DNA of 22,853 nucleotides from Hydrolagus colliei (Eukaryota), in NCBI GenBank assembly GCA_035084275.1. It is one part of the record CM068769.1 of this genome. One strand, 5' to 3'. The notes beneath the pieces were generated by a model. It had not been told where the DNA came from. It saw nothing but the letters and a program-made list of their open reading frames with translations, and searched no databases. The translations under genes and the position numbers were made by a program. Positions 470 to 22,505 of the stretch are shown here, one piece after another (position 1 is the stretch's first letter; each line of letters opens with the position of its first letter).

Positions 470-545
470 CGCTACTATAGAAACGTGACAAGCCACTTCC
501 TCTATTTTGCAACCCTAGTACTTTACACATTGAACTGCAGTCACC
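470..545 (-). mobile_element. tRNA-derived SINE head remnant abutting the Va RSS (A-box side; B-box not seen)
   Basis: Minus strand GGTGACTGCAGTTCAATGTGTAAAGTACT. The paralogous copy ending at 21626 reads GGTGACTGCAGTCCAATGGTTAGAGTACT, which is tRNA D-arm/A-box-like. Confidence 0.55.
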
Positions 546-551
546 TTAGCA

Positions 552-590
552 TGTTTTTGTACAGGTCCTTCGTAAACACACATCACTGTG
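552..590 (-). other. 23-bp-spacer RSS of Va
   Basis: CACAGTG (590-584), 23-nt spacer (583-561), ACAAAAACA (560-552). Confidence 0.95.
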
Positions 591-864
591 CTCTGCGCAC
601 AGAAGTAAGTGGCGGAGTCAGACACTCGCACGTCTCCGATCGATAACGTGCTGTTTTTTCCAACAGTCAAAGCATTTATCCTGTCCTTCTGCTTCATCTC
701 TCTCGATCCCAACACCAAGTAAGTGATGGAGCCGTTTCCATGCTGTTTGTACCATTGAAACGCTGGGTTGGACACTGTGGTGCTGCACTTCATAATTACA
801 TTCCCATTTTCATTCTCTGTCAGAGCCTGAGGTCTCTGTGACACTTCACTTTCAGCCAAGACAC
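591..864 (-). CDS. TCR alpha/delta-type V exon Va (apparently functional)
   Basis: Acceptor ccccag|GT at 865/864. (C)VLAESEVSQRPQ...MKC...FQWYKQ...DSATYFCAQS has Cys23, Trp41 and Cys104, an open frame and a canonical RSS. Confidence 0.92.
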
Positions 865-976
865 CTGGGGACATAGAATATTCTTGGATAGCATTTCATA
901 AAATGTCTGCAATAAAATTTGTAATTATGTACCTGGCAAAACAGAATGCGTGTGTCCAATCTGATACTCTACTTAC

Positions 977-1034
977 ACAAAATTGTTGCAATTAAATAAA
1001 AAATTAGATAAGGTGCATTAAAATCCTGCTTCAT
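977..1034 (-). CDS. Leader exon of Va
   Basis: ATG at 1034, MKQDFNAPYLIFYLIATIL plus 1 nt (58 nt), donor GTAAGT at 976-971. Phase 1 matches the V exon; intron 112 bp. Confidence 0.85.
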
Positions 1035-1144
1035 TCTCAAGTCTTTTCTCTTCACGTCAAAATGTCTTATTGATGTACAGTGGGAAATCAGCTACAGGCT
1101 GATAAATGTTTGCAAATTTTTGTGGAACGCAGTTAGCTTTGTAG

Positions 1145-1195
1145 CTTATAAGTAGATTCTCAGTGACACCTTCACATACTTCTCACTTCCTGTAT
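1145..1195 (-). promoter_or_regulatory. Putative Va promoter elements (ETS motif, TATA-like box)
   Basis: ACAGGAAGTG on minus (1193-1184) and TATAA (1150-1146). The ttcctgtatgtt block recurs upstream of Vc (about 13372-13384). Confidence 0.5.
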
Positions 1196-1973
1196 GTTGG
1201 CTTCTGCAGAATTCATTCGCCAATTGGCTAGCCACTTACTGCTGGTTAGCGGAGGTTTGCATGTGTGTGAAGTTAGCAATCGTGACTTTTGTTTCTCCCA
1301 CGCTAATTGGTTCCCAATCAGGCGATAGTTTGGGCATATATACTTACTCCATACACATACACCTCATTTTAGTTTACAATAAGGAGGAAAACGCAGCTTA
1401 GTCCATTGGTGGTTCACTTTGCTGGGGATAATATTCCCCATCTCCAAAATGTTCTACATCAAAGGCAAGCAACACTAAAATAATCATTAATATTGATAGT
1501 ATAATTACTACCATTATTATTAATATCGCTGTCCAGTCACCTATGTAATTATTTGTACGCCTTGAAGCATGTAAACAATATAATTCTTCTGCACCTAAGT
1601 TTAATTAATTGTTGTCAGTTTTATCGTGTTCCCAATCTACACTGAAACAAACTAACTTACTGTAGTTACCAAAATCCAATGCAATTGTTAACAAAGTGAG
1701 ATCCGCTAGAATGCGGATGCTTATGTTGGAGAAAGGCAATAACATGAATATATGACATCCCTATTACTTTTCTAGCAAACTAAGCCTTGCGATTGTCATG
1801 GTTACGGTTTAGACAAATCTTTGAACATTTCAGCAGAAGCAGCAATATTACGTACGATTTAACCAATGTGGACTGTAACAGGAAGCACCTGTTATAGCTG
1901 TCAAGGCAGATTGACACAGAATGGAACGTGGCAAGCTATGTCAATTGCAGATGATGTTATATGTGTGTTTTGT

Positions 1974-1987
1974 CTGCCATCTGCTGG
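1974..1987 (-). promoter_or_regulatory. CTCF core motif
   Basis: Minus strand CCAGCAGATGGCAG is a full match to the CCASYAGRKGGCRS consensus. It lies in a block duplicated at about 16520-16990. Confidence 0.65.
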
Positions 1988-2559
1988 TGGACTGTACGAG
2001 CATAATTTAAAAGCAAGAGTTTTTTTGGGGGCCCTACATAACGTTCCTGCACCTATTGTCTCCAATGGAAATTGATAGCTTAGTTCCATTTACATGCTTT
2101 TTCCTCGTATTGTATGTGTTTTAATGGGACACTCGAATTCATTCTCTTCAAAGTCTCTTACTATGACATATCCCTGATAATTGTTTCTCCACTTTAATTC
2201 TATTCCTTGCTCTGATCCTGTAAACGTTGATTATATTTTGCTTCACCTTGAGCTGGCATTCACCGTTTACATGACAGCAGCACAATAGTTACATGTGTGT
2301 GGCACTATTGATTTGGCGATCATGTCACAATGCAGTGTATTTACTACTACATCAACAAAAGAATCACATTTGGGACGTCCTCCCGACGTGACAGGCGCTA
2401 TGTAAGTACAATCGTGTTGCTGTTGGTCACGTCGGATGGACGTCCGAAGCCGCTGACCAGTCAGCTTGGGAACTGAGCAATGGAGAGGGCAGGGTAGTGG
2501 GGAGGGTCGTGAGAGAGGTGACACTGGAGGGCGAGAGTTAGCAGCGAATGGACAGAGTG

Positions 2560-2900: not shown

Positions 2901-2946
2901 TGATAAACAATCTGCATTTTTATTTTTGTCACGTAAATAATAAACT

Positions 2947-3493
2947 TTGTCCTCAATTCCTATTGCCTCATGGACCAACACAATCATTTTAATTGGAGAT
3001 ACAACTGTCCGAGGTATAGATCTGCGTTTTTGTGAACGGAAACGCGAATCTCGGAAGGTGTGTTGCCTACCAGGTGCCAGGGTTGAAGACTTGACTGAGC
3101 GGGTGCATGAAATTCTGCTAGGGGAAGGGGAAAATCCACTTGTGGTGGTCCATGTTGGGACCCATGAAGTTGAGAGGAAAAGACCTGAGATGCTCTAGGG
3201 AGAGTACCAGAGACTATGGAGTAAACTGAAAAATGGAACTTCGAGAGTGGTGATCTCTGGGTTGCTTCCAGTGCTTCGAGCAAGCCAGTTCCAGAATGCT
3301 AGAATAAGGCACATCAATGCATGGCTGGAGAAGTGGTGTAGGAAGGAGGGTTTCTGGTTCCTAGACCATTGGGACCAATTCTGGGGTAGGTGGAACCTGT
3401 ACAAAATGGATGGGTTACACCTGAACAGGGCTGGAACCAATCTCCTTGCAGGGAGGTTGTCGAGTTTTGTGGGGGGGGGGGGCTTTAAACTAA
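2947..3493 (+). pseudogene. CR1 ORF1 C-terminal SGNH/GDSL esterase-like domain, disrupted
   Basis: IGDTTVRG...CCLPGARVED...VVVHVGTHE...DGLHLNRAG motifs; premature TAG at 3196-3198; expected TTAAACTAA end at 3485-3493. Confidence 0.8.
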
Positions 3494-6492
3494 TCCCGGG
3501 GGGTGAGGGTGGGAAACTGATCAGTTGTTCAAATACGGGAGGGGTAATAAAGAGGACAGGGGTAAAGGTAAGACGGGAGAAAAATGCAGAGGAAGTAATT
3601 TGTGCCTTAGAGTGCATGTATGTAAATGCACGAAGTTTGAGAAATAAAATTGGTGAGCTGCAGGCTCAGATTGCTGCGAGGCGATATGATGTTATAGCAG
3701 TAACAGAGACTTGGCTCCAGCATGGGCAGGAATGGGAGTTGAACATTCCTGGTTATAATGTATTCAGGAGGGATAGAGAAGGGAGAAAAGGGGGCGGGGT
3801 GGCAATTTTAGTTAAGGACTCAGTGACTGCCTTAGAAAGGAACGAGGTGGAAGAAGGACTAAAAACCGAATCTATCTGGTTAGAAATGAGGAATAAAAAA
3901 GGTGCAGTTACACTGTTAGGGGTATACGATAGACCACCAAATAGTGGCGAGGAGATAGACAAGCAGATCTGCAAGCGTATCACGGAGAAATGCAGAGCTA
4001 ATAGAGTAGTGATAATGGGTGACTTCAACTATCCCAACATAGACTGGCAGAATAGTAGAGTAAACGGCAAGGAGGGAGAAGAATTCCTGAAGTGTGTGCA
4101 GGACAACTTTCTTGATCAGTATGTTTCCAGTCCAACGAGGAAAGAAGCATTGCTGGATCTAGTTTGGGGAAACGAGGTAGGGCAAGTTCAACAGGTTTCT
4201 GTAGGTGAGCATCTTGGGAATAGTGACCACAATATCGTTAGATTCTGAATAATTATGGAAAGAGATAAGGAACAATCACAGGTGAGGACACTCAACTGGG
4301 AAAGGGCTAATTTCAATGAGTTGAGGTGGGACCTAGCCAAGGTGGATTGGAAAGAAAAATTGGCAGGTAAGGCAACTAACGAGCAGTGGGCAGCGTTCAA
4401 AGAGGAGATAGTTCAGGCACAGGTCAAAAGCATCCCCACAAAGGTGAAATGTAAGGCATCCAAACATCCCTGGATGACTAAGGAAATCGAGGCCAAAATA
4501 AAACAAAAAAAAGAGGCTTATGATACGTGTCAGGCTCAAAATTCAGAAGGGAACAAAGCAGAATATAGGAAGTGTAGGATAGAACTAAAAAAGGAAGTTA
4601 GAGGGGCAAAGAGACTGCATGAAAAACAATTACCGAGTAAGATTAAGGGGAACCCTAAGGTTTTTTACCAACATATTAAGAGTAAAAGGTTGGTCAATGA
4701 GAGGGTGGGGCCAATTAGGGACCTAGGAGGAAATCTCATTGTGGAGGCAGAGGGCATGGCTGATAAACTGAATGAGTACTTCGCCTCTGTCTTCACAAAA
4801 GAAAATGATACAGCCAATGCCATGGTATTAGAGGAGAGGGTAGGAGAAATGGACAGAATAATTATAACCAGAGAGGAGGTGCTAAAAAGGTTGAGGTCGC
4901 TCAAGGTGGATAAGTCACCTGGTCCGGATGGGATGCACCCTAGGTTACTAAGTGAGGCACGGGAGCAAATAGCAGGGACTCTGGCCACGATCTTTCAATC
5001 TTCCTTGGACACAGGTGTCGTGCCAGAGGACTGGAGGATAGCGAATGTTACTCCCTTGTATAAAAAGGGGCAGAAGGACAAGCCTGGTAACTACAGACCA
5101 GTCAGTCTAACGTCGGTAGTGGGCAAACTTCTAGAGTCCATAATCAGGGACAAGGTAGATCTTCACTTAGAAAGATATAGGCTAATAAAGGACAGTCAAC
5201 ATGGATTTGTTAAAGGCAAATCTTACCTTACAAATCTGATAGAATTTTTTGATGAGGTAACGGAATGGGTGGATAATGGTAGCGCAGTTGATGTAGTTTA
5301 CATGGACTTTCAAAAGGCATTTGACAAAGTGCCACATGAGAGACTTATTATGAAATTAAAGGCCCATGGCGTAAAAGGGACAGCGGCAGCGTGGATCCAC
5401 AACTGGCTGCGAGACAGAAAGCAGAGAGTTGTAGTGAGCGGCTGTTTTTCAGATTGGAGGGAAGTGAGCAGTGGTGTGCCACAGGGATCGGTTTTGGGAC
5501 CATTGCTGTTTGTAATCTACATCAATGATCTGGACATGGGTGTACGGAGTACAGTTTCCAAGTTTGCAGATGACACTAAGTTAGGGAGAATAGTAAACAG
5601 TGAGGAGGATAGTAGCCATCTGCAAGAGGATATAGACAAATTGGTAAAGTGGGCAGACACATGGCAGATGAAGTTTAATGCAGAGAAGTGTGAGGTGATG
5701 CATTTTGGGAGAAGAAATGAAGGGAGGCAATATAGGCTAGATAGTACAATTTTAAATGGTGTAAAGGAACAGAGAGACCTGGGAATTTGTGTTAGTGACT
5801 CGTTGAAGGTGGAAGGACAGGTAGACAAGGCTGTTAAGATGGCATATGGGATACTAGGCTTTATAAATAGGGGTATAGAGTACAAAAGTCAGGAAGTGCT
5901 GACTAACCTCTATATGACTTTGGTGAGGCCTCAGCTGGAATACTGTGCTCAATTCTGGTCACCACACTACAGAAAGGATGTGAAGGCATTGGAAAGGGTA
6001 AAACGAAGATTTACTAGGATGGTGCCAGGATTGAGGGACTTCAGCTATGAGGAGAGGCTAGATAGGCTAGGGTTATTCTCTCTCGAGCAGAGAAGATTGA
6101 GGGGAGACCTAATAGAAGTTTATAAGATCATGAGGGGTTTCGACAGGGCAAATAGAGAAAAACTATTTACACTCGTGGGTGAATCTGTGACTCGTGGTCA
6201 CAGATTTAAAATAGTTTCAAGGCGAAGTAGAGGGGAGCTGAGGAGAAATTTTTTCACTCAGCGAGTTGTTCGAATCTGGAATGCATTGCCTGAAAAGGTG
6301 GTGGAGGCTGATTCGATAACAACTTTTAAAAGGGAATTAGATCTTTATTTAGAGAGAACGGGTCTATTAGGCTATGGGGAGCGGGCAGGGCAGTGGGATT
6401 GAATCGCTCTTTTCAAAGAGCCGGCACAGACTAGATGGGACGAATGGCCTCCTTTTGTGCCGTAAAATTCTATGATTCTATGATTCTATGAT
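2985..6492 (+). mobile_element. CR1-clade LINE, 5'-truncated, nearly intact coding sequence but inactivated
   Basis: ORF1 esterase remnant, APE-RT ORF2, 3' UTR with ggcaca...tgtgcc inverted repeat, and three ATTCTATG tail units (6467-6490) typical of CR1. 5' boundary approximate; no target-site duplication recognised. Confidence 0.93.
3616..6402 (+). pseudogene. CR1 ORF2: AP endonuclease plus reverse transcriptase, one in-frame stop
   Basis: YVNARSLRNK, TETWL, MGDFN and SDHN endonuclease motifs; TGA at 4246-4248; the frame continues 4255-6402 with YRPVSLTS, QHGF, GVPQGSVLGP and FADD. Confidence 0.92.
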
Positions 6493-7419: not shown

Positions 7420-7930
7420 CACACAGAGCCCCGCCCACTCAGACACTTCCCCGCCCACACAGCGCCCCGCCCATCAGTCACTGCCATGCGCAAAAAGCGC
7501 CCCGCCCACTCAGTCACTGCCCCACCTACAAAGAATACAGCCTACCAAGCAACTTCACCGCCCACACAGAGTCCCGCCCACTCAGTAACAGCCCCGCCTA
7601 CACAGAGCCCCGCCCACTGAGTCGCTACCACGCGTACACAGAGTCCAGCCTACTAAGCAACTTCCCTTCCCACACAAAGACCCTCCCACACAAAGCCCCG
7701 CCCACCTAAAACCTCGCCCACCCTCTCACTGCCAGATGCAGAGAAAGCCCCTCCCACCGAGAGCCACGCCCACAGTATCTGCGCCGCGATCACGTAGCGC
7801 CGCACACCCAGACAGGGCCACGCCCTCACATAGCCCCGCCCACACAGACAAGGCCACGCCCTCACAGACCCCCGGCAACAGACTCGGTTCCTCACAGGTC
7901 CTGCCCAATAAATTGCTGCCACGCCCACAA
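7420..7930. repeat. Degenerate GC-box minisatellite array (C-rich plus strand)
   Basis: Nine CCGCCC and four CCACGCCC cores counted, often in a cacagagccccgcccac unit. Confidence 0.85.
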
Positions 7931-8747: not shown

Positions 8748-9844
8748 CACACACTTTACACACGAACAATGACCTAATGCTTTCACACAGCGCCAGCGCC
8801 TGGAGAGGGGAATCCTTCCACTCTGATCCAGATTACAAAGCAAACCAAAGCCTGAACGTGAAGGCTGGCCATGTTAATAATATCATCACAATCTTTCCAG
8901 TTCTTATAGCGCCTTTTTTTTTTGTGGTCCAGACATCACAAAACGCAGTGGAGTCAATTAACTCTATGTTGTGAGCGAATTGCCAGACAATTGATGCACA
9001 GCAGTGTCTGGTGAACAATCATGGATCCAGCGTTGTCAACCAAATGGCCACATTATCGCCATGTTTATCGTGAAGGAATTACTTCATGTGGAAATGGGTG
9101 TGCAACTAACGCTAGATAAACAAACTTCTGTAGGGGACGGAAACTTGACCCACAATTTCCCTTCTGGAAATCGAACCCAGGATACTCAATTGCGGGTCAA
9201 GTGCTTTTTTAAGCTCCCATTGGGTAAGAGGTTTTGCTTTGCTTGTTTCCCTCATGGGATCATCGAGCTGATTGTTTGACTGTTAGATCATAAGTCAATG
9301 TGATGTTCACATCGTGGCTTTGTCTCCTATCCAACAGGAAAGCGCTGCTGCCAACTCTGTAGAGATACAAATACCAATCCATTGGACACTATTCGTTTGC
9401 GTAGTAGTTTCTCACTGTTACCGAGGCTGATGTGGTTGTACAGTATTGTACAGCGTTAAAGGAACATTAGCTTATTGTCGACAACAGAATCGAATACATT
9501 GTTTCTTGTACCGAAGTGAGATCCATCAAATGGCAGCTGCTGTTTGGGAGACAAAATGAGTAATAAAAAGGGAGAGATCAATTATTTTTTGAAAGCAATA
9601 GATTAGTCCTGCTTGAGAAATAGAGGTAAAGTTGTGATTGGATCAGATTATGAGCAAGAATGGTGATTGCCAGAGCATTGAACTGTTTCTTCAAGTCGTG
9701 GATCTACCTGTCCATGTCAGAAACAAGTGTGAATATTTTTGAATATTGTCCCAGTGAACTGATATGCCAAGCGACCACCAAAGTATGTTGCTTGCTGTTA
9801 ATACAGAGGCATGTGTATTAACGAACGGATATTTTGTTCTGCCA

Positions 9845-9905
9845 TGACTGAACACAGGTGCTCTCACTTGTAAGGCAACTGCTGTAACCACTGAGATTCA
9901 GGTCT
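9845..9905 (-). mobile_element. tRNA-derived SINE head abutting the Vb RSS
   Basis: Minus strand CTGAATCTCAGTGGTTACAGCAGTTGCCTTACAAGTGAGAGCACCTGTGTTCAGTC: A-box-like, anticodon-arm-like and degenerate B-box segments. Confidence 0.6.
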
Positions 9906-9914
9906 CAGTCTGTG

Positions 9915-9953
9915 AGTTTGTGTATGGCAGAAACGCTGATCTGTGCCTTTGTG
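9915..9953 (-). other. 23-bp-spacer RSS of Vb (non-canonical heptamer)
   Basis: CACAAAG (9953-9947), 23 nt, ACACAAACT (9923-9915). Confidence 0.8.
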
Positions 9954-10263
9954 GGGCTCCGTGCACAGTAATACACAGCAGAGTCTGAAAGTCTCACTTG
10001 GGATGTAGTTAGTGGCACGGTTCTCTCCGCTTTATCCACCTTCGTTGAAAAACGTTCTTCTGGGAATTCTGCATGACGATGGTCTTTGCTGCTGGAGTGT
10101 ATCTGAACGATATATCCTGGAATTTGTTTGGGATTGAGACGATACCATATTAGGTAAGGATTGTTGTCGCTTGTCGTGAAATTACACTACAGATGCACAT
10201 CTTCGCCTTCGTCAATTGCCACAGTTGATTGGGGCTGTGTTACACTATCTCCTCCACACAGCC
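9954..10263 (-). pseudogene. TCR alpha/delta-type V pseudogene Vb (not in the ORF track)
   Basis: Acceptor ttccag|GG. GLCGGDSVTQPQSTVAIDEGEDVHL*CNFTTSDNNPYLIWYRLNPKQIPGYIVQ...RFSTKVDKAERTVPLTTSQVRLSDSAVYYCARSP, with TAG at 10189-10187 directly before Cys23. Paralogue of Vf. Confidence 0.9.
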
Positions 10264-12058: not shown

Positions 12059-12552
12059 TTCGCAGTTTTTTCTGTTTGCATTCAGTAAAGTGAATTGACT
12101 GCATATTTGTGGGTGAAATCCGGCAGCTGATTGAACACAGAAGTGACCCTCGAAGCGTCGTGGGTTGCAAATGACCAATATATATTATTGTTGTGGTTTA
12201 TTTGTCGGCCGGATTATTATTGGGCAATTAGGACAAGGAAGTTTGCCCCAGGTTTCTCCCTGGTCAGGCTAGTCTCACGCTTGTAAGGTGAGTGTTCTAA
12301 CCGCATAGCTCAACGAGTAATTGGAACTAATCACGTCTTCCAGATGCTACTAAATCTCTGCTGGTTGTACAGTGATGTGGAATTACTGTGTATGTTTCCT
12401 GCTGAATGTAGCAGCCACACTTACACAGCAGTGTCCCAGAAACAGTCATCGACTGAAGAGGAACACTTTTTAAAATCAATCATTATTCCCATGAAAGCGA
12501 TCCGCCATTCGACGAAATACTGTATTCCTACTTAATGCTATGTAAATATATG

Positions 12553-12618
12553 TATGTGTTTGTATGTGTGTGTGTGTGTGTATGTGTGTGTGTGTGTGTG
12601 TGTTTGTGTGTGTGTGTG
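12553..12618. repeat. (TG)n microsatellite
   Basis: Direct reading. Confidence 0.95.
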
Positions 12619-12654
12619 GGGGGTAATGTAGCACGTCTATTATGTCCCCATGTG

Positions 12655-12718
12655 GCGAATGGAACTCAGGTCGGCTTGTTTACGAGGCGGGTGATCTGAA
12701 TGTTGAGCTACAGTAACC
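12655..12718 (-). mobile_element. tRNA-derived SINE head abutting the Vc RSS
   Basis: Minus strand GGTTACTGTAGCTCAACATTCAGATCACCCGCCTCGTAAACAAGCCGACCTGAGTTCCATTCG; starts 6 nt after the nonamer. Confidence 0.7.
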
Positions 12719-12724
12719 TCAGCT

Positions 12725-12763
12725 TGTTTTTCTACAGGATCCTCTTAGACACGCAGCACTGTG
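12725..12763 (-). other. 23-bp-spacer RSS of Vc
   Basis: CACAGTG (12763-12757), 23 nt, AGAAAAACA (12733-12725). Confidence 0.9.
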
Positions 12764-13384: not shown

Positions 13385-14189
13385 TGCTTGTTTGACATTC
13401 ATTCCCCAATCGACTACAAGCAGCGTTCGTTCAGTCCAGAAGATAGGAAGTGACTGCACTTTTCAATAAGTGACTGCACTTTGCAATCGCTTTGAATCAG
13501 TTGAATTACGTAATCTTTGGCTGCATATCATGCAGCAACAGATTCAGCCACAAATACATACAGTCAATAAACTTTACAGTGTAATCTATGAAGCGCTATG
13601 GGACGCTGATAATATGTGGAAAGCGCTATATCAAAAGCAAAGGATTATTATATTATATATTATATAAGCAAACATAGCTATTACTGTTCGTAATATTATT
13701 TTAGGATCTAATTGGAATGTATTATCGGAAGAACTGTCCATAGATGCATTTATTTAGCGATAAAAGTTACTTCCATGCATTATTATGTCAAGTCATTGAA
13801 GCGTCTCATAGGTCTGCATAGATTCTACTCTCGAGGGCAGAGACAGAATATTTGGCAAACTCAGCATTTAGTTTGTGTAACACAATGTCCCACGATCACA
13901 TGTGAAGTGACCGTACAATTGTGCTGGAACAATGTCTGCCACGGCACCAGTAGAAACTCTGTTCACCCTGGAGCAAAGCCATGAAATCATTATTGCCTCT
14001 TGTTTCAAGCCACGTGAAAATCCCTTTCATGTCTTCTTGGATTGACAGCTTCTCCGACACTGCAGCCACCGCCAGGAAAAGCGACCCACTAACTGGCTAA
14101 CAGACAGGTTACAATGTACTGCTGTAACCTGCTGTAAACGTGTATTTGTATGCCGAGTATGGGACCATGCATAAGGATTTGGGATTCGG

Positions 14190-14256
14190 ACTGGGAATCC
14201 AACTCAGGTCCACTCGGTTGCAAGGTGAATACTCAATCCACTGACCTCCTGGACTC
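14190..14256 (-). mobile_element. tRNA-derived SINE head about 100 bp 3' of the Vd RSS
   Basis: Minus strand AGGTCAGTGGATTGAGTATTCACCTTGCAACCGAGTGGACCTGAGTTGGATTCCC. Confidence 0.7.
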
Positions 14257-14359: not shown

Positions 14360-14398
14360 AGTTGTTGTACGAGCAATCTGCCCTTCTGTAACAGTGTG
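14360..14398 (-). other. 23-bp-spacer RSS of Vd
   Basis: CACACTG (14398-14392), 23 nt, ACAACAACT (14368-14360). Confidence 0.85.
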
Positions 14399-14696
14399 GG
14401 CTCCACGGCACAGAGATACACGGCGGTGTCACTCACAACCATCCTGAGAATCTGCAAGTTAATTAATTTCTTCCCCTTGTTCACCTCGGCAGTGAAACGG
14501 TCAGCAATTCCAACAGCTTTGTCTACCTTTCCCGAAGCATATATCCTGAGGAAATACTGAAGAGCTCCATCGGGATATTGCCTGTAGCAGAAGATAGTGT
14601 CTATTCTTGAAACGTTCATTCTTATTGTCACGTTTTGTCCTTCAAGTTCTGTTATCTCAGGGGGGGTTTGGTATATGACACCACTCCCATTGGCCA
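14399..14696 (-). CDS. TCR alpha/delta-type V exon Vd, open frame, atypical core (no Cys23; Trp41 replaced by Cys)
   Basis: Acceptor ttccag|TG. ANGSGVIYQTPPEITELEGQNVTIRMNVSRIDTIFCYRQYPDG...DRFTAEV...SDTAVYLCAVEP. Confidence 0.88.
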
Positions 14697-15269
14697 CTGG
14701 AAAAACAATACATTTCCAATCAAAAATATGAGTTACAATTCTCTTTACTATGTATATTATGGAGAGCTTTTACACGTCTAAAATGTCAATATGAAACGCA
14801 AGAGTTGCTGTTATTACTGTAGCTTTGCTGGGGAACGGTAAACGATCACTAGTGTTTTGGTGCTGATAGATTTTCTGTCTGTGTTTGTAAATGTTAGAAC
14901 TGCTTATACTTGCGAAGTTGTTCCATTCAACTTTTAACCTTGATTTTCTGTAGCTCGTGAAATAATTCATTAAAAGCTACTTCCAAATTAAAAATACACA
15001 TGTCTTGGGTTTGTGTGTTTGCATTATCTCGTCTTGGCGCCGTCTCCAATCGCTTCAATGATGTGAAGCGAATTTAATGTATGTTCTGTTGGAGGAAACT
15101 CGGCATTCAACTGTGGGTAGCTGTATCCCAAAGTCATTCTTGGATTGATCGATCAAACTAATATTATGTAAAAAATCTTTTTAGAAAGCGATTCATTAAT
15201 TAAATAACAACAACGAAAACATTAAACCCATGTGCGCAGCATGCATTGGTCATGTCCAAACATACTTAC

Positions 15270-15504: not shown

Positions 15505-15845
15505 CGACGTGCGACCTGTGCTGCGCAGTGGTTAGAGCTCTCTGCTTACAAGCGTGAGACCTGTGTCTGAATCTAGGCACATCAGGGCGAAACCTTGGGC
15601 CAGTCTCCTAACTCCACACACACACACCTAATAATATTCCGTTCAAAAATACACAATAATAAAAATGGGTCTTTTCAAGCCACGGCTGTTTGTGAGGATG
15701 ATGCTTGCTGTGTGCAATTGTCTACTGTGGTTTACCCACAAATACACAGTCACTTGCTTGGCAGTATATTGTGTGAAACGCTTTGAGACGTCGAAAAAAT
15801 GTGAAAAGCGCTAAATCAAATGTAAATATTATTAATTTAAAATAT
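15505..15845 (+). mobile_element. tRNA-derived SINE with L2-like 3' tail
   Basis: Head gcagtggttagagctctctgcttacaagcgtgagacc, central cccacaaatacacagtca, tail gcgctttgagacg...gaaaagcgcta; collinear with 18018-18340. Confidence 0.75.
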
Positions 15846-16123
15846 GTAATGTTTTTTTTTTGCTGCTGTACCGGTGATTGGAAGCTGATGTATCTCGGAA
15901 AAGAATGGAGAGTGGACTTGCAGTTAGCATACAAACAAACTGATATAGATGAACGCAACTCACAAGTGAGCCGACTTGTGTTTGATTCCCAGGCAGGGCG
16001 ATACTTTGGGCAAATGTTCTTAATCTACACACGCAACTGCGTGTCGCTGACAATGAGTCGGATCGTGTAAATTAGTATATTGGTGGATCGCGTTGATGTC
16101 GTCATCAACCCTTCAAAGTTAAT

Positions 16124-16148
16124 TAATAATAATAATAATAATAATAAT
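16124..16148. repeat. (AAT)n microsatellite
   Basis: Direct reading. Confidence 0.9.
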
Positions 16149-16793
16149 GATTTTGTATTTCCTTCCCTGTCTGTTTTGGGGAACATGTTGCGTCCGCGGT
16201 GTTTCCCGCACAAAATATACAGTTACTAATTGATGCAGCAGATCGTGTTTTGTACTATCAATTGTCTGGGTGATGTGATAATACACTATATCGAAATCAC
16301 AAATTATAATTTTTTATAACTCACAAAAGTGTGTAATTTGTAAGCACTTTGAGATGTGTGGAAGATTTGAAACTGTATTCCCCTTTGTTGGGAATACATC
16401 TAAGCAAATAAGCTGTGAACTATGATTTCTAACGTGAGAAAAATAGGCCAGTATGAAAAGTGTTCCCAAATGAAACCAATAAAGAAAAACAGATTGCTGT
16501 TATCGAAATCTAATACCTTGATCAAACCAATAAGATCCACGGAAGGGCGGATGCTTGTTTGTGAGAAGTACAACAAAAAATATGGATACATTGTTCATTA
16601 GTCAACCGAAGCCTTGCGTTAATCAGGCTTTAGACAAACATTTGTACATTTCAGCTGAGCCAGCTATAGTGTATAGCAGGGAAACAGTGTCAACTGTAAC
16701 AGCAAGCACCTGCTGTGGCTGCCAAGCAAGTTGTTATAGAAAGCAACGTGGGAAGTTACGTCAGTTGCCGCTGGTGTTATAGGTGTGTTTATA

Positions 16794-16807
16794 TCGCCAT
16801 CTGCTGG
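16794..16807 (-). promoter_or_regulatory. CTCF core motif (paralogue of 1974-1987)
   Basis: Minus strand CCAGCAGATGGCGA, one mismatch to CCASYAGRKGGCRS; same orientation as the first site. Confidence 0.6.
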
Positions 16808-17536
16808 TTGATTGCAGCTAGAACACGTGTACTGCAGAGACAAATGATTGCAAATTGATTTCGACCCACCATATCTTTCCTGTTCCTATCCTATCCTTTG
16901 GATACTTACACCTTATTCCCATTTCCCTGCTCGTTTCTCATATTGCCTATGCCTCAATGGGACATTCGACTCCAACTTCATTCACACTCTCGTATTGCGA
17001 CGTGTCTCTGCTGGTGCGTGGCACAGACTATTTAATTTTTTTCCTTGTACTTCTCTTGTATTTGGTAATGTTACATTTCGTTACGTTGACATTAAGAATT
17101 TACATTGCTGAATCATAAGCTTTATATGGATATACATTTATATTACTTTTATACAGCGACTCGCACATTGATGTCTCAAGGTGCTGTATTCCCTAGAGGA
17201 AAAGTGACAACTAATCTGGGTACTTGTTAAATATAACCCTCTCTTCTCACTGTCCCATAGAACAACAGTTATGGTGGTTGAAGGTTTGGTTTGCTTAAGC
17301 GTTGATTTAGTTTGTTCTAACTGCACACCCAGAAATGGGTCCAGCTATATTTTCGGCCGGATAAATCGAGTTTTCTAACTACTGAGCTACAGGAGCTAAT
17401 TATAATCGCATGAAAAGTGGGTTCACACTTACAGTAAGTTAATCAGAGATGTGTGGATTAAGGAAACGTGCCGAACTACAAACACTTGTAATTAGATAAC
17501 GCCTTCTACGCATCTTAGAAAGATTCTCCCTCAATA

Positions 17537-17594
17537 GGAATCGAACCCAGTTCCTACCGAGTTGAGTGCTACAACCAATATGGCACATAACGCC
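17537..17594 (-). mobile_element. tRNA-derived SINE head abutting the Ve RSS
   Basis: Minus strand GGCGTTATGTGCCATATTGGTTGTAGCACTC...GGGTTCGATTCC, with a perfect B-box at 17547-17537; starts about 5 nt after the nonamer. Confidence 0.75.
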
Positions 17595-17599
17595 ACAAG

Positions 17600-17637
17600 G
17601 CTTTTTGTACGGGTGTCTCGGGGATGCCTTCGCTGTG
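17600..17637 (-). other. 22-bp-spacer RSS of Ve
   Basis: CACAGCG (17637-17631), 22 nt, ACAAAAAGC (17608-17600). Confidence 0.85.
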
Positions 17638-17921
17638 GGCCTCAGTGCACAAACATAGGCAGCGCTGTCGCTGAGCTGGAGGTTGTCGATCTTGAACTGG
17701 AAATGTTTCTTAGAGGAATCCATCAGGGCAGAGAAGCGTTCGTGACTGATATTCCTCCCGTAGGAATGCCTTTGGATGAGGAAAGCGGGCCCTTCACTGC
17801 GGCGCTGGCGGTAAAGCAGCGCTGATATGCTGTCACTAGTCGTGGAGACATTACAGTGAGGCGCCTTCGAAACGCCAGTCTGCTTTCGGGACCTGCCTCA
17901 CCGAAACTCCATCACTGATTC
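17638..17921 (-). pseudogene. TCR alpha/delta-type V pseudogene Ve (frameshift in FR1)
   Basis: GISDGVSVRQVPKADWRFEGASL* with TAA at 17853-17851. The shifted frame reads CNVSTTSDSISALLYRQ...ERFSALMDSSKKHFQFKIDNLQLSDSAAYVCALRP. About 11 nt are missing before Cys23 relative to the other V exons; the Trp41 position is Leu. Confidence 0.88.
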
Positions 17922-18017
17922 CTACAGGAAACAATTGTGTAATTCAGTGTTGAAACGATCAATACTAAGTTAGAAAACAAACGCTATTGTGGGCCACATT
18001 TCATAGAGTATATGTAG

Positions 18018-18340
18018 TTCCTGTAGCTCAGAGGTTGGAGCACTCGCGTTACAAACGTGAGACCTTTGTTCATATGCAGGCAGATCAGGAAGAGACTTTG
18101 GGCGAGTTTCCTTACTCCACATGCGCGACTAATAATAATCCCTCCGAAAAAACAAAATATTGTGATGAAAACTGGTCATTTTCAACGCACGACTGTTTGT
18201 GGGAACGCTGGTGTGTGCAATTGGCTGCCACGTTTCGCCAACAACTATACAGTCAATTCACTTTAATGTAATCTGTGAAGCGAATCGAGACGCCGATAAG
18301 ACGTGAAAAGCGCTATATCAAATCAACGGTTATAATTACT
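18018..18340 (+). mobile_element. tRNA-derived SINE with L2-like tail, in the Ve intron
   Basis: gttcctgtagctcagaggttggagcactcgcgttacaaacgtgagacc head through gaaaagcgctatatcaaat tail. Confidence 0.75.
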
Positions 18341-18708
18341 GTATACTATGACACACTTTGAGACGCTTTGAGAATGTCTTCACACACGGGGATATTTTGT
18401 TCTACAAGATGAATGTCTGTAAGAATTTGTCAGTCATTTGAATATTAAACTGCATCGTCCTTCAAATGGAAACCTCTAATAATAATCATCCTTAAAACTT
18501 ATATAGCGCTTTGCACGTTTTCTAGACGTCATTAAGCGCTTCACAGAATATACTTTAAAGTGAATTAACTGCAGATTTGTGGGTGAAACGTGACAGCGAA
18601 TTGTGCACAGCAATGCTAAAGTAACCAGGGTTAATGGAGACTCTGTTTAGAGATGACCCGTGGTATTGACTTGGATGGCTGTCGGTAATGATATCTAGAT
18701 TAACTAAC

Positions 18709-18757: not shown

Positions 18758-19401
18758 TGCGTTCAGACACCACAATCAGCGTTTATCTCTCTGCTGCTCT
18801 TGACACCGTGTGACACTGAGGCCATTAATAAAGCTGAGAACACTTTGTGATGTTGTCTCTTATCTGTGCGTCACTATCTCGTACCTCGAGCTGCTGTGGG
18901 CGTGTAGGACTGCTCCAATCAGATTCAGGCTTAAACTTGTACATTTGATCCTGAGTATACACACCCACAAATTACACAGTCAATTCACTTTACAGTATAG
19001 TCATTGAGAAATATTAATGGTAAGGCGATTGATCAGATGGAAGGACCATTATAATAACGACTTATTTCCTCATTCAAACGCTATCGCCTTCAGTCTTCAT
19101 TACAAACTTGAAACTTTAGATGATCTTATATTTATTGTAATACCAATATATCCGACCCACCTTTATATCTCAACAAATACATGTAAAAGTTGCATAAATA
19201 CAAGCAACATTGAATCAAACCTCAGTGTTTCTTTGAATTCAGTTAGTAATTCATTATTAATACTAAACTTATTTTGAAGGAATTATATCTACTGTAGATG
19301 AATTAATTCACGAGTCACCCAAAAAGGGGGTTGCTACTGACTCCTGTCTAAATAGAGGTATACACATACTAAGAAATCTTGTCCAAAGTTTTGCGCAGCA
19401 C

Positions 19402-19465
19402 GTAGTCGAACCTAGGTACTCTCGCTTCCGAAGCGACTTGCTCTCACTTCTGAGCTAGAGGACAC
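19402..19465 (-). mobile_element. tRNA-derived SINE head abutting the Vf RSS
   Basis: Minus strand GTCCTCTAGCTCAGAAGTGAGAGC...CCTAGGTTCGACTAC, with clear A- and B-box-like segments. Confidence 0.75.
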
Positions 19466-19473
19466 GGCATGAT

Positions 19474-19512
19474 AGTTTTTGTAGGGCGGTAACGCTGTTC
19501 TTTGTCTCTGTG
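19474..19512 (-). other. 23-bp-spacer RSS of Vf
   Basis: CACAGAG (19512-19506), 23 nt, ACAAAAACT (19482-19474). Confidence 0.92.
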
Positions 19513-19822
19513 GAGCTCAGTGCACAGTAATACACCGCCGAGTCGGTGACTCTCACTTGGGATATATTTAATGGGACGGTTCTCGCCGCTTTATCCACTG
19601 TTGTTGAGAAACGCTCTTTTGTAAAGTCTGCGTATTTGTGCTTGTTCCTGGTTGATGTGCTGAGGATGTATTCTGGGGGTTTGTAGGGGTATTGTCGGTA
19701 CCAAAACAAATATGGATTGTCGCTGATTGTCACTGTGTAATTGAACTGCAGATACACATTCTCCCCTTCATTCACTGTCACAGTCGCTGGGAGCTGTGTC
19801 GCCGAGTCTCCTCCACAATGCC
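19513..19822 (-). CDS. TCR alpha/delta-type V exon Vf, open frame but Cys23 replaced by Phe
   Basis: GHCGGDSATQLPATVTVNEGENVYLQFNYTVTISDNPYLFWYRQYPYKPPEYIL...RFSTTVDKAARTVPLNISQVRVTDSAVYYCALSS. Confidence 0.9.
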
Positions 19823-20019
19823 CTGGGAAACACAAGCACATCAGCGTTTAATGCAATAATAACGTAAACATACTTGTGTTTGATACAGCATCGCATAGAG
19901 TGAATCTCCAAGCGTGCCATCTCCAAGCGTTTCACTGACTATATATTGACTCCATTTTGTGGGTGAAAGCGGCAGGCAGTTGAGTGCATCTTTCCAGCAC
20001 AAACGGTCATGGAATAATA

Positions 20020-20330
20020 ATGATAATCCTTGCATTTAGTATAGCGCTTTTCACTTCTTGGAGTCGACTCAAAGCGTTTCCCAGTGTATACTGTGAAGTG
20101 TATTGACTATATTTTCTTCAGTAGCTGCATTTATCAAGAGATCAATAGCGTAGTAAAGTGATCTGCCAATCGACTAATAGATCGAGTACCTAATAACTGC
20201 TCGGTAAGCAGATCTATATTTGGGTCTGTGGAAAATGTACATTTGTAGTTTCGCCCAATCCCACCGGGAATCGAACTCAGATCCTTCAGCATGCGAGGCG
20301 AGTGTTCTAACCACTAGCTGTGGGAAACCA
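20020..20330 (-). mobile_element. tRNA-derived SINE in the Vf intron
   Basis: Head TAGTGGTTAGAACACTCGCCTCGCATGCTGAAGGATCTGAGTTCGATTCCC (about 20320-20266); L2-like tail aagcgctatactaaatgcaagg near 20030-20050. Confidence 0.7.
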
Positions 20331-20436
20331 CTTATCCACAAGTGGTATAGTATGTTGGTTATTCCATGCAATAACACTTTGGCTTTGAAGAACATGTAAA
20401 GGAATTGCATCCATATGGAGTAGGTGTTTGGCTTAC

Positions 20437-20482
20437 CTGCGAAGGTAATGATGGCGGCTGCCACATATATGTACATTGTCAT
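20437..20482 (-). CDS. Leader exon of Vf
   Basis: MTMYIYVAAAIITFA plus G (46 nt); donor GTAAGC at 20436-20431. Confidence 0.85.
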
Positions 20483-21139
20483 CTGTGTTAATGGCACCCT
20501 GTATTGAGGAAGCGCTGGTGGTTTAGTGGGAGAATGTTGGCTGGTAAACAGTAAGATACCATGAGGAGGACTGAACAGGCAATGACATAAACAGGTTGCC
20601 ATACACTGTGAGTGAGCTGGTCTGTGGTTTATGTACAACCTTTGTTTCTCTGTCACTGGGCGTCATCTTCTCTGCTCTGCCATCTCGCTCCTCCATTGGT
20701 TCTCTTCTAACACTGACATGCCTTTGATCAAATGGATGGCAGACACCTGCAGCAAGATAGATCGATAGATGCATTACATGTCGTCCAAACACATAAATGA
20801 GTTCCACACATCTGTACAATCTGTGGACTGATGTAGTTTAATGGTATCAACACTCGCCTTACAAGCACTTTGCCTGCGTTTGATGCCTGCTAGAGCAACA
20901 CGTTGGTCAAGTTTACTTACTCCACACACCGACCGAGGTTTACCGAGAGTAAGTAGGATTACGGTTGATAATCGCTTAAAGAGCAGCTTTCCAGGGAAAC
21001 AATCTCTCCCAGCATAGGGAACTCGATCCGCGTCTGTTTACAGGACAGTGCTGTGCCGAACTGAATGCGTCGTTTCGCCAGCAAAACGAAAACTAAGTAC
21101 ATTTTACGTTGTACACTGTGAAGTGATTTATATCTAGCT

Positions 21140-21215
21140 AGCTATATATATACATATATATATATATATGTACATCTATATATATATAATCTATATATAT
21201 ATATAAACTATATGT
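21140..21215. repeat. (TA)n-rich microsatellite
   Basis: Direct reading; occupies the position paralogous to the microsatellite at the window start. Confidence 0.9.
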
Positions 21216-21299
21216 ATCTTACAAAATAGGTAGGAGGAGGTGCTCAGAGGAACTCCCTCAGTGTGTGTGTATGGGGTTAGATAATTCCTTTATTTGTGT

Positions 21300-21531
21300 T
21301 GATCTCGGTCCTCACATCAAAACACTCAAGAATCTCGCACCATCCTACATTCGTGACTTCCTATCCCTCCCATCTCTTTACCAACCTGCCCGCCCCCTTC
21401 GTTCGGCTGGATCTGACCTGCTCTACGTCCCCCGATCGACCCTCCCAACCAATCGCGGGCGAACCTTCAACCACTCTGCCCCCAACATCTGGAAATCCAT
21501 CCCGAATTCATTCCGCCACAGTTTGTACTGA
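21300..21531 (+). mobile_element. L2 fragment, paralogue of 228-450
   Basis: KNLAPSYIRDFLSLPSLYQPARPLRSAGSDLLYVPR...WKSIP; collinear with the window start. Confidence 0.75.
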
Positions 21532-21626
21532 GAAGTGAATTGACTGTATGCGCTACTGTATAAACGTGGCAAGCCACTTCCTCTATTTTGCAACCCTAGT
21601 ACTCTAACCATTGGACTGCAGTCACC

Positions 21627-22447
21627 TGGGCAGACACATGGCAGATGAAGTTTAATGCAGAGAAGAGTGAGGTGATGCATTTTGGGAGAAGAAATGAAGG
21701 GAGGCAATATAGGCTAGATAGTACAATTTTAAATGATGTGAAGGAACAGAGATACCTGGGGATATGTGTTAGTGACTCGTTGAAGGTGGCAGGACAGGTA
21801 GACAAGGCTGTTAAGAAGGTATATGCGATACTAGGCTTTATAAATAGGGGTATAGAGTACAAAAGTCAGGAAGTGCTGACTAACCTCTATAAGACTTTGG
21901 TGAGGCCTCAGCTGAAATACTGTGTTCAATTCTGGTCACCACACTACAGAAAGGATGTGAAGGCATTGGAAAGGGTACAACGAAGATGTACTAGGATGGT
22001 GCCAGGTTTGAGGGACTTCAGCTATGAGGAGAGGCTAGATAGGCTATGGTTGTTCTCTCTGGGGCAGAGAAGACTGAGGGGAGACCTAATAGAGGTTTAT
22101 AAGATCATGAGGGGTTACGACAGGGCAAATAGAGAAAAACTATTTCCACTCGTGGGCGAATCTGTGACTCGTGGTGACATATTTAAAATAGTTTCAAGGC
22201 GAAGTAGAGGGGTGCTGAGGAGAAATCGTTTCACTCAGCGAGTTGTTCGAATCTGGAATGCATTGCCTGAAAAGGTGGTGGAGGCTGATTCGATAACAAC
22301 TTTTAAAAGGGAATTAGATCTTTATTTAGGGAGAACATGTCTATTAGGCTATGGGGAGCGGGCAGGGCAGTGGGATTGAATCGCTCTTTTCAAAGAGCCG
22401 GCACAGACTAGATGGGCCGAATGGCCTCCTTTTGTGCCGTAAAATTC
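21627..22447 (+). mobile_element. 5'-truncated CR1 3' fragment, same family as 2985-6492, inserted next to the Vg RSS
   Basis: Aligns by eye to 5650-6470; open RT C-terminal frame at 21645-22379; absent from the paralogous site at 545/546; ATTCTATG tail missing. Confidence 0.92.
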
Positions 22448-22466
22448 CTGTACAAAAACCTTAGCA

Positions 22467-22505
22467 TGTTTTTGTACAGGTCCTTCGTAAACACACATCA
22501 CTGTG
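22467..22505 (-). other. 23-bp-spacer RSS of Vg
   Basis: CACAGTG (22505-22499), 23 nt, ACAAAAACA (22475-22467); identical to the Va RSS over 39 nt. Confidence 0.95.

What the first reader, a model, noticed from the sequence alone, without database searches (positions are those of the whole stretch)
470..22505. A Pol III (tRNA-derived A/B-box) module sits directly behind every V-segment RSS, always in the same orientation
Seen: a tRNA-like SINE head on the V-sense strand begins just 3' of the nonamer in Va (6 nt), Vb (about 10), Vc (6), Ve (about 5), Vf (about 9) and Vd (about 100). In Vg the same head ends at 21626 and has been pushed 834 bp away by a CR1 insertion. This spans four divergent V families, while SINEs elsewhere in the window occur in both orientations. 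Established: TFIIIC-bound B-boxes can act as insulators or chromatin organisers, and CTCF elements just 3' of mouse proximal VH RSSs promote their use by RAG. Inference: either (a) the head was co-opted as an RSS accessibility or loop-stalling element and copied with each V duplication, or (b) the A-rich nonamer is a recurrent retro-insertion target. Paralogues Va/Vc/Vg and Vb/Vf share ancestry, so there are only 3-4 independent observations.
Basis: partly seen in the sequence, partly recalled or inferred. Interest (0 to 1): 0.85.

Follow-up and report, generated by a model that had tools for sequence, protein, structure and literature searches.

The report
Decayed SINE copies behind V-segment RSSs
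Every antigen-receptor V segment in this chimaera-type gene cluster is followed, just past its recombination signal, by the worn-down front end of an ordinary tRNA-derived SINE, placed far too regularly for chance, but decaying like junk DNA rather than like a working Pol III control element.

Summary
All seven V segments lie on the minus strand with 23-bp-spacer RSSs. Each has a tRNA-derived SINE head in V-sense orientation behind its nonamer. The gap is 6 nt (Va, Vc), 8 nt (Vb, Vf), 5 nt (Ve) and 104 nt (Vd). In Vg a CR1 fragment displaced the head by 834 bp. Other SINE heads in the window split 6 minus to 5 plus. Chance placement is excluded (about 2e-7).

These are not intact Pol III modules. 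ARAGORN and the Rfam tRNA model find no tRNA at any of them; only the consensus of all 18 heads folds as a tRNA. Heads diverge between paralogues at the local non-coding rate. The three V segments with intact reading frames have the worst B boxes, and the best B boxes sit behind a pseudogene and an atypical V.

Read-through gene models of Callorhinchus milii show the same head at the same offset behind at least ten more VH-like V segments, so it travels with V duplications. A later CR1 insertion hit the same spot in Vg.

Best reading: a few SINE insertions at an insertion-prone site beside the A-rich nonamer, then copied with each V. Co-option is not supported. The cause of the site preference is unresolved.

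The parts
552..590 (-). Va 23-RSS (heptamer 584-590, nonamer 552-560)
   Evidence: 39/39 identical to the Vg RSS
436..545 (-). Va RSS-adjacent SINE remnant. tRNA-like head 493-545 (D and anticodon arms only; T arm and B box missing) joined to SINE body piece 436-492. A 6-nt gap lies at 546-551.
9915..9953 (-). Vb 23-RSS (Vb is a VH-like pseudogene with an in-frame stop)
9835..9906 (-). Vb RSS-adjacent SINE head (model positions 15-82), 8-nt gap at 9907-9914, B box decayed
12725..12763 (-). Vc 23-RSS
12366..12718 (-). Vc RSS-adjacent SINE: head 12610-12718, internal (TG)n at 12551-12618, body 12366-12480 (model 157-271). A 6-nt gap lies at 12719-12724.
14360..14398 (-). Vd 23-RSS (Vd lacks Cys23 and Trp41)
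13788..14256 (-). Vd SINE: head 14145-14256 and body 13788-13905, starting 104 nt past the nonamer. The intervening 14257-14359 matches no SINE model.
17600..17637 (-). Ve RSS with 22-nt spacer (Ve is a pseudogene with a stop and a frameshift)
17447..17594 (-). Ve RSS-adjacent SINE head, 5-nt gap at 17595-17599, perfect B box GGTTCGATTCC. A second head in tandem lies at 17363-17399.
19474..19512 (-). Vf 23-RSS (VH-like V lacking Cys23)
19370..19465 (-). Vf RSS-adjacent SINE head (model 14-109), 8-nt gap at 19466-19473, B box GGTTCGACTAC. The TAG of its A box ends the read-through ORF 19455-19841.
22467..22505 (-). Vg 23-RSS
21517..21626 (-). Vg copy of the Va-type head and body piece, displaced from its RSS
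21627..22447 (+). 5'-truncated CR1-like LINE fragment (96% identical to 5650-6470), antisense to V, inserted 8 nt past the Vg nonamer at the gap/head junction
22448..22459 (+). 12-nt filler CTGTACAAAAAC at the CR1 3' junction. It is an inverted copy of the Vg nonamer plus the start of the spacer (22468-22479).
18008..18360 (+). Control: best-preserved full-length SINE copy not next to an RSS. Other such heads lie at 8520(-), 9206(-), 10495(-), 12328(-), 17399(-), 20325(-), 10986(+), 15506(+), 15956(+) and 20826(+).
2947..6492 (+). Near full-length CR1-like LINE: APE-type endonuclease ORF 3247-4248, RT ORF 4255-6402, (ATTCTATG)n 3' end. It is the same family as the Vg insertion.

Best explanation
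The elements are ordinary, old, decaying copies of a roughly 330-bp tRNA-derived SINE. The family is most likely the SacSINE1/CmiSINE kind described in Callorhinchus milii, but that membership was not tested.

Shown: each copy is homologous to the dispersed SINE family of the window. Several still carry SINE body sequence behind the head, so they are whole insertions and not isolated promoter modules. Within each V lineage the copy is inherited through V-segment duplication. It diverges at the same rate as introns and intergenic DNA.

Inferred: a small number of founding insertions (2-4) landed 5-8 nt 3' of the nonamer in V-sense orientation because that flank is an insertion-prone site for LINE-driven, target-primed reverse transcription. 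If the first nick falls in the T-run opposite the A-rich nonamer and the target duplication is 12-15 nt, three things follow. The inserted element must be in V-sense orientation. A complete nonamer is regenerated next to the spacer, so the RSS survives. The SINE 5' end comes to lie 5-8 nt behind the nonamer. Insertions in any other position or orientation inside the RSS would destroy it and be lost.

On the sequence evidence, the heads have no current Pol III, TFIIIC or insulator role.
For: - Family membership: 18 heads align to one another. Their consensus, but no single copy, is called a 72-nt tRNA by ARAGORN at default settings. nhmmer finds body segments behind the Vc, Vd and Va/Vg heads.
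- Inheritance by duplication: the Va/Vc gap plus acceptor region is 17/22 identical, with the same 6-nt geometry. Vb/Vf homology runs 65 nt into the head, and the two units also share an intronic and an upstream SINE.
- Neutral decay: Va/Vg head 92.5% identical, against 91.4% for intron, 94% for a neighbouring repeat and 100% for the RSS. Vb/Vf head 69% against 69-76% for other non-coding segments. Va/Vc head 58% against 67%.
- Cloverleaf pairs kept: 8-13 of 20 at RSS heads against 6-14 of 20 elsewhere. A and B boxes are no better at RSSs. The Rfam tRNA model finds nothing at the Ve, Vf or Vc heads even at E<=10.
- Intact V segments (Va, Vc, Vg) have a lost or 3-mismatch B box, while the best B boxes follow the pseudogene Ve and the atypical Vf.
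- Outside the window: of the 16 VH-like C. milii gene models examined, seven have tails that translate the SINE head at the same offset (for example 'ALQKLPCGVL-W-LSGYSTRLTSD...FPYSTH'). Four of these (P0008, P0012, P0001, P0006) were matched by tblastn to the head consensus, E 3e-11 to 5e-3. The other three (P0164-P0166) were retrieved by their tail (E 8e-23 to 5e-14) and read by eye. Three more end exactly at the TAG of the A box.
- Insertion-prone site: an independent, later CR1 insertion hit the same junction in Vg, 8 nt past the nonamer. The chance of landing within 10 nt of any of the seven nonamers is about 0.3%.
- Chance placement of the SINE heads is rejected.
Against: - No target-site duplication, with or without a second partial nonamer after the SINE tail, could be found for any RSS-adjacent copy. 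None was found for the non-RSS copies either, so the test has no power.
- The 5' flanks of the non-RSS SINE copies do not show nonamer-like A-runs, so a general A-run target preference of this family is not demonstrated.
- The CR1 insertion is antisense and has only a 3-4 nt duplication, so it does not follow the proposed T-run priming geometry.
- The number of independent founding events cannot be fixed from one window. Possibly chimeric C. milii V models (P0015, P0164, P0165) hint that 3' flanks may move between V families by recombination.
- Neutral-rate decay does not exclude a sequence-independent or transient role.
Confidence: 0.55

Rival explanations
1. Co-option: the SINE head was retained by selection as an RSS-proximal chromatin element (TFIIIC-bound B box, Pol III unit, nucleosome excluder or loop-extrusion obstacle) that raises RAG access to the adjacent V. 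It would be a functional analogue of the CTCF sites behind mouse proximal VH RSSs.
For: The same element, in the same orientation and within 5-8 nt, occurs in three deeply divergent V lineages, plus a fourth at 104 nt, far beyond chance. The head 5' end is intact each time rather than eroded. Ve and Vf keep near-perfect B boxes. Several C. milii paralogues appear to keep both boxes, as read from amino acids.
Against: The heads diverge at or above the local neutral rate. The B box and T arm are deleted in Va/Vg and degraded in Vc, which are the only V segments with intact ORFs. The well-preserved boxes sit behind a pseudogene and an atypical V. The Va head differs from Vg's at four D-arm/A-box positions, and Vg keeps the family-consensus base at three of them. 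Vg keeps an intact ORF and a perfect RSS with the head 834 bp away. There is no tRNA call by ARAGORN or Rfam. No CTCF-like motif lies near any RSS.
Confidence: 0.12
2. One or two ancient insertions spread between V families by recombination, not by repeated insertion. Unequal crossing-over or gene conversion with breakpoints in FR3 or the RSS would transplant the RSS, gap and head block onto other V segments.
For: C. milii models P0164 and P0165 combine a Vd-type N-terminal part with VH-type FR3, RSS and head. P0015 combines a Va-type V with a VH-type spacer, nonamer and gap. Heads of different lineages are no more different from one another than independent SINE copies are.
Against: Within the window the RSS spacers and gaps of the four lineages are unrelated and the gap lengths differ (5, 6, 8 and 104 nt). 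The chimeric proteins may be gene-model artefacts, for example a spurious intron between neighbouring V segments, and no DNA could be fetched to check. VH-type and TCR-type V segments diverged long before a recognisable SINE copy could have been inserted (established knowledge, not tested here).
Confidence: 0.15
3. Turnover and retention artefact. In a SINE-saturated, deletion-prone cluster, only DNA touching a selected element survives, so some repeat will always abut the RSS.
For: SINE-model sequence covers at least 19% of the window, with about one head per 1.3 kb. Nested insertions are common.
Against: Erosion predicts random break points and random orientation in the abutting repeat. Here the complete SINE 5' end is present every time and is always in V-sense.
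Confidence: 0.05

Closest known systems
SacSINE1-CM / CmiSINE (tRNA-headed SINEs with a conserved central domain and an L2-type tail) of Callorhinchus milii, PMC5499810
   Same: It has a tRNA-derived head with A and B boxes in the consensus and a roughly 330-bp unit with a conserved central block. It is very abundant (about one per 1.3 kb here, against about one per 1.8 kb genome-wide from the counts in the paper). Copies are old and diverged 20-50% from consensus. The host is a holocephalan: the nearest annotated V proteins are all C. milii.
   Different: No reference consensus was available, so family assignment rests on the paper's description and my memory of the domain sequence. The RSS-adjacent placement is not described in that paper, nor in any paper found.
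CTCF-binding elements just downstream of proximal mouse VH RSSs
   Same: A short sequence element sits within tens of bp 3' of V-segment RSSs, in a fixed orientation, and recurs across many V segments.
   Different: No CTCF-like motif lies in or near the heads. There is no evidence of conservation. The only CTCF-like motifs in the window lie in a separate intergenic block (1973-1987 and 16793-16807).
tDNA and B2-SINE TFIIIC-dependent insulators (established knowledge)
   Same: They are tRNA-type A/B-box sequences next to regulated genes.
   Different: Those elements depend on an intact B box. Here only 2 of 7 heads keep one, and both follow a pseudogene or an atypical V.
Target-site preference of APE-type LINE endonucleases (L1 TT/AAAA rule; established knowledge)
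   Same: The A-rich nonamer offers a T-run on the opposite strand. The predicted orientation and a 12-15 nt duplication would give the observed 5-8 nt gap.
   Different: The partner LINE here would be L2- or CR1-like, and its nicking preference is unknown. No duplications are detectable. The CR1 insertion at the same spot does not follow the L1 geometry.

Membership tests
tRNA-derived SINE | 5' head derived from a tRNA, with internal Pol III A and B boxes | tested here: met
   The consensus of 18 heads is called a 72-nt tRNA (Val-like) by ARAGORN at default thresholds. The consensus has A box TAGCTCAGTGG and B box GGTTCGATTCC. Individual copies are degenerate.
tRNA-derived SINE | Dispersed multicopy element with head, body and tail, in both orientations | tested here: met
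   Three full copies of about 330 bp and more than 30 fragments are present. There are 18 heads, 13 minus and 5 plus.
tRNA-derived SINE | Flanking target-site duplications | tested here: inconclusive
   No significant duplication was found for RSS-adjacent or other copies. The copies are old and nested, so the test has little power.
tRNA-derived SINE | 3' tail shared with a partner LINE | not testable with these tools
   The only LINE in the window (CR1-like) has an unrelated 3' end. No L2-2_CM sequence was available.
SacSINE1-CM / CmiSINE of C. milii | Sequence match to the published consensus (Deu or CORE domain) | not testable with these tools
   No consensus is held in the paper text or its supplements.
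Functional Pol III / TFIIIC element (tDNA-like insulator) | Intact B box (GGTTCGANNCC) at every functional copy | tested here: not met
   B-box mismatches: Ve 0, Vf 1, Vd 2, Vc 3, Vb 4 or more, and Va/Vg have lost the T arm.
Functional Pol III / TFIIIC element (tDNA-like insulator) | Sequence conserved above the neutral rate between paralogues | tested here: not met
   Head against non-coding identity: 92.5 vs 91-94% (Va/Vg), 69 vs 69-76% (Vb/Vf), 58 vs 67% (Va/Vc).
Functional Pol III / TFIIIC element (tDNA-like insulator) | TFIIIC or Pol III occupancy, or transcripts | not testable with these tools
   This needs ChIP or small-RNA data from thymus.
RSS-proximal CTCF-binding element | CTCF core motif within tens of bp 3' of the RSS | tested here: not met
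   The pattern CCASYAGRKGGCRSY with up to 2 mismatches gives 5 hits in the window. None is within 350 bp of an RSS.
V gene segments of a TCR alpha/delta-type cluster with Ig-like V segments | V-set domain exon followed by a 23-RSS, with TCR-type and VH-type V segments interspersed | tested here: met
   Pfam V-set matches. RSS scan. PDB best hits are TCR alpha/delta for Va and Ig heavy chain for Vf.

The most novel reading that the evidence does not exclude
The 5-8 nt just 3' of the RSS nonamer is a true hot spot for LINE-mediated retroposition in chimaera antigen-receptor loci. It has been hit repeatedly by SINEs and by CR1. Alternatively, the inserted tRNA-type head gave a selective advantage when new, through transient Pol III/TFIIIC-driven opening of the adjacent RSS. 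In that case V segments carrying it were preferentially used, kept and duplicated, and the promoter later decayed.
Probability: 0.15. Interest if true: 0.7.

Novelty: new member of a known kind. Interest (0 to 1): 0.38.

Why it matters
If the pattern holds across the locus, it would show that the RSS nonamer flank shapes where retroposons land and survive. It would also show that V-gene duplication units in an early-branching jawed vertebrate are delimited by SINEs. That is useful for dating V-family expansions and for annotating RSSs. It would offer a natural test of whether sequence just outside the nonamer matters for recombination, using Va against Vg and V segments with and without B boxes. 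As it stands, the data argue against a new class of RSS-linked Pol III regulatory element.

Tried and rejected
- tRNA detection: ARAGORN at default settings found 0 tRNAs. At an 80% threshold it picks up only the Vd and Ve heads among the RSS copies, along with obvious false positives. The Rfam search of the whole window gave one weak tRNA hit at a non-RSS head (20.7 bits). Rfam on 116-nt slices around the Ve, Vf and Vc heads gave no tRNA hit at E<=10.
- Target-site duplications: searching up to 900 nt downstream for a second copy of nonamer plus gap gave nothing above shuffled controls. The same was true for non-RSS copies. An apparent Vc match (CTGTAGAAAAACAAGCTGAG against CTGTACAACCAGCAGAG) overlaps SINE-internal sequence, and I dismissed it.
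- My impression that the 104-nt Vd gap holds an antisense SINE tail was not supported (p 0.3-0.8).
- CTCF motifs next to RSSs: none.
- External DNA: window ORFs and C. milii protein P0001 are not on record in the contig collection, so no further loci could be read. The Va protein found no homologue in the word-indexed search. The exhaustive search found C. milii relatives whose tails stop inside the spacer, so the Va family could not be checked outside the window.
- Literature: no paper in the held library describes SINEs adjacent to RSSs. A sequence-string search for the SINE's conserved block found nothing relevant.
- Motif-only A/B-box scanning was too noisy to use on its own.

Full report
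**What is in the window.** An RSS scan finds seven RSSs, all on the minus strand; six have 23-bp spacers and Ve has 22. Each follows a V-set exon.

- Va, Vc and Vg are paralogues of TCR alpha/delta type. Va/Vg are 96% identical and Va/Vc 71-78%.
- Vb and Vf are paralogues of Ig-heavy-chain type.
- Vd and Ve are separate lineages.
- Only Va, Vc and Vg have canonical open frames. Vb has an in-frame stop, Ve has a stop and a frameshift, Vf lacks Cys23, and Vd lacks Cys23 and Trp41.
- The nearest annotated proteins are all from the chimaera Callorhinchus milii, at 58-71% identity for Vf and 63-65% for Va. The window is therefore holocephalan.
- A near full-length CR1-like LINE with an APE endonuclease and a reverse transcriptase lies at about 2950-6490.

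I built a model of the local SINE from three full copies: 18008-18360 (+), 15506-15857 (+) and 12328-12073 (-). I searched the window with it.

- It finds 18 heads. Seven are the copies behind the seven RSSs, all in V-sense. The other eleven split 6 minus to 5 plus.
- Counting from the 8-nt acceptor start of the head, the gap after the nonamer is 6 nt in Va and Vc, 8 nt in Vb and Vf, 5 nt in Ve and 104 nt in Vd.
- In Vg the same 6-nt gap is followed by a 13-nt filler plus target duplication and an 821-bp CR1 fragment. The head resumes at 21626.
- With 13 independent head insertions scattered at random, the chance that three of four V lineages have a sense head start within 10 nt of the nonamer is about 2e-7. 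None of 200,000 simulations reached three.

**What the elements are.**

- The 18 heads align with one another. Their consensus is called a 72-nt tRNA by ARAGORN at default settings, with canonical A and B boxes. The family is therefore a tRNA-derived SINE.
- No individual copy passes. ARAGORN finds none. The Rfam tRNA model gives only a 20.7-bit hit at a non-RSS head. It finds nothing at the Ve, Vf or Vc heads even in 116-nt slices at E<=10.
- SINE body sequence follows the head in Vc, Vd and Va/Vg. These are remnants of whole SINE insertions, not free-standing promoter modules.
- The description of SacSINE1-CM and CmiSINE in C. milii fits: tRNA head, conserved central domain, L2-type tail, hundreds of thousands of old copies (PMC5499810).

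**Are they conserved?** No.

- Between Va and Vg the RSS is 39/39 identical and the V exon 96.7%. The head is 92.5%, the same as intron (91.4%) and a neighbouring repeat (94%).
- All four head differences lie in the D-arm/A-box region. At three of them Vg, whose head has been moved away, keeps the family-consensus base, and Va, whose head is still adjacent, does not.
- Vb/Vf heads are 69% identical, against 69-76% for the other non-coding segments. Va/Vc heads are 58%, against 67%.
- RSS-adjacent heads keep 8-13 of 20 cloverleaf pairs, against 6-14 for the others. Their A and B boxes are no better.
- The V segments with intact frames have the worst heads: the T arm and B box are missing in Va/Vg, and Vc has three B-box mismatches. 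The perfect and near-perfect B boxes follow the pseudogene Ve and the atypical Vf.
- No CTCF-like motif lies near any RSS.

**Inheritance with V duplication.**

- Va and Vc share the gap and acceptor region (17 of 22 positions) and the same geometry.
- Vb and Vf are alignable 65 nt into the head. They also share an intronic minus-strand head and an upstream plus-strand SINE.
- Outside the window I could fetch no DNA. However, Ensembl-type gene models of C. milii V segments read through the RSS until the first stop, so their C-termini report the downstream DNA.
- Sixteen VH-like models were examined. Seven have tails that translate the SINE head at the same offset, for example ...YYCALS-PTEAQISGSALKKQPCGVL-W-LSGYSTRLTSD...FPYSTH. 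Four of these (P0008, P0012, P0001, P0006) match the head consensus by tblastn, E 3e-11 to 5e-3. Three (P0164-P0166) were retrieved through their tail at E 8e-23 to 5e-14 and read by eye.
- Three more, like the window's own Vf ORF, stop exactly at the TAG of the A box.

The head is therefore a fixed part of that family's duplication unit across the genome.

**How many founding events, and why there?**

- VH-type and TCR-type V segments separated before cartilaginous fishes arose (established knowledge). The spacers, gaps and gap lengths of the four lineages are unrelated. I therefore count at least two and at most four SINE insertions next to a nonamer.
- A fifth, demonstrably independent event points the same way. 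After the Va/Vg duplication a CR1 element inserted antisense 8 nt past the Vg nonamer, within 2 nt of the SINE 5' end.
- Its 3' junction carries a 12-nt inverted copy of the nonamer and spacer start, as if the nicked V-sense strand had snapped back on itself before reverse transcription. A random insertion would fall within 10 nt of one of the seven nonamers about 0.3% of the time.
- I therefore favour an insertion-prone site.
- A simple geometry fits, and this part is inference. A first nick in the T-run opposite the nonamer, with a 12-15 nt target duplication, forces V-sense orientation. It regenerates a complete nonamer beside the spacer and leaves the SINE 5' end 5-8 nt behind it. Other insertions into the RSS would be lost with the V.

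**What speaks against that mechanism.**

- I found no target duplications for any copy, RSS-adjacent or not.
- The non-RSS copies are not preceded by nonamer-like A-runs.
- The CR1 event has a 3-4 nt duplication and the opposite strand logic.
- Three C. milii models look like chimaeras that carry a VH-type RSS and head behind Vd-type or Va-type sequence. If they are real, recombination could move the block between families and lower the number of insertions needed. They may also be annotation artefacts.

**Verdict.** The regularity is real and non-random. The elements are known things, namely old SINE copies. Their spread is explained by V duplication. The sequence evidence is against a conserved Pol III, TFIIIC or CTCF-like role. 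What remains open, and worth a locus-wide count, is why the founding insertions and a later CR1 chose the same few nucleotides beside the nonamer. No paper in the held library reports such an association.

Noticed in passing
window 22448-22479 (and the empty site at 540-560 in Va): The CR1 fragment in Vg ends in a 12-nt filler, CTGTACAAAAAC, that is the reverse complement of the adjacent nonamer plus the first spacer bases. Together they form a perfect hairpin with an 8-nt loop and create a consensus nonamer ACAAAAACC on the opposite strand. It looks like snap-back self-priming of the nicked target strand before reverse transcription. The target duplication is only CCT/ACCT.
   Followed up: partly
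window 1973-1987 (-) and 16793-16807 (-), inside the repeated blocks 1808-2176 and 16629-17010: Two CTCF-like motifs, CCAGCAGATGGCAGA and CCAGCAGATGGCGAT, each one mismatch from CCASYAGRKGGCRSY. They sit at corresponding positions of a 370-bp intergenic block that occurs twice (68% identical), both in V-sense orientation, about 0.8-1.3 kb upstream of the Va and Vd leaders. If any CTCF-type architecture exists in this cluster, it is here and not at the RSSs.
   Followed up: partly
Callorhinchus milii proteins P0164 (A0A4W3GMC9), P0165 (A0A4W3J238), P0015 (A0A4W3GAJ6): These gene models appear to be chimaeras. P0164 and P0165 combine a Vd-type N-terminal part with VH-type FR3, RSS and SINE head, with different breakpoints. 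P0015 combines a Va-type V with a VH-type spacer, nonamer and gap. They are either recombination between V families or spurious introns between neighbouring V segments.
   Followed up: no
window 9954-10264, 17638-17925, 19513-19830, 14399-14700: Four of the seven V segments are probably not functional. Vb has an in-frame stop before Cys23. Ve has a stop and a frameshift. Vf has Phe in place of Cys23. Vd lacks both Cys23 and Trp41. All keep recognisable RSSs.
   Followed up: partly
window 7420-7874: A GC-rich minisatellite with 36-nt and 108-nt periods, about 7.5 copies at roughly 71-78% matches. It is built on CCCCGCCCAC-type (Sp1-like GC-box) units and lies in the long gap between the LINE and Vb.
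   Followed up: no
window 2947-6492: A CR1-like LINE that is almost intact. The endonuclease ORF (3247-4248) and the reverse-transcriptase ORF (4255-6402) are separated by a single stop, and the 3' end carries (ATTCTATG)n. It is 96% identical to the fragment in Vg, so the family was active recently.
   Followed up: partly
window 10386-10495 / 20223-20325 and 10986-11298 / 20826-21129: The Vb and Vf duplication units each contain three SINEs at matching positions: behind the RSS, in the leader intron (V-sense), and upstream of the promoter (antisense). Detectable Vb/Vf homology begins inside the RSS-adjacent head, and its last BLAST-aligned bases (11044/20884) lie inside the upstream SINE.
   Followed up: partly
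window 17363-17399: A second SINE head lies in tandem, in the same orientation, about 50 nt downstream of the end of the Ve RSS-adjacent SINE segment (17447).
   Followed up: no
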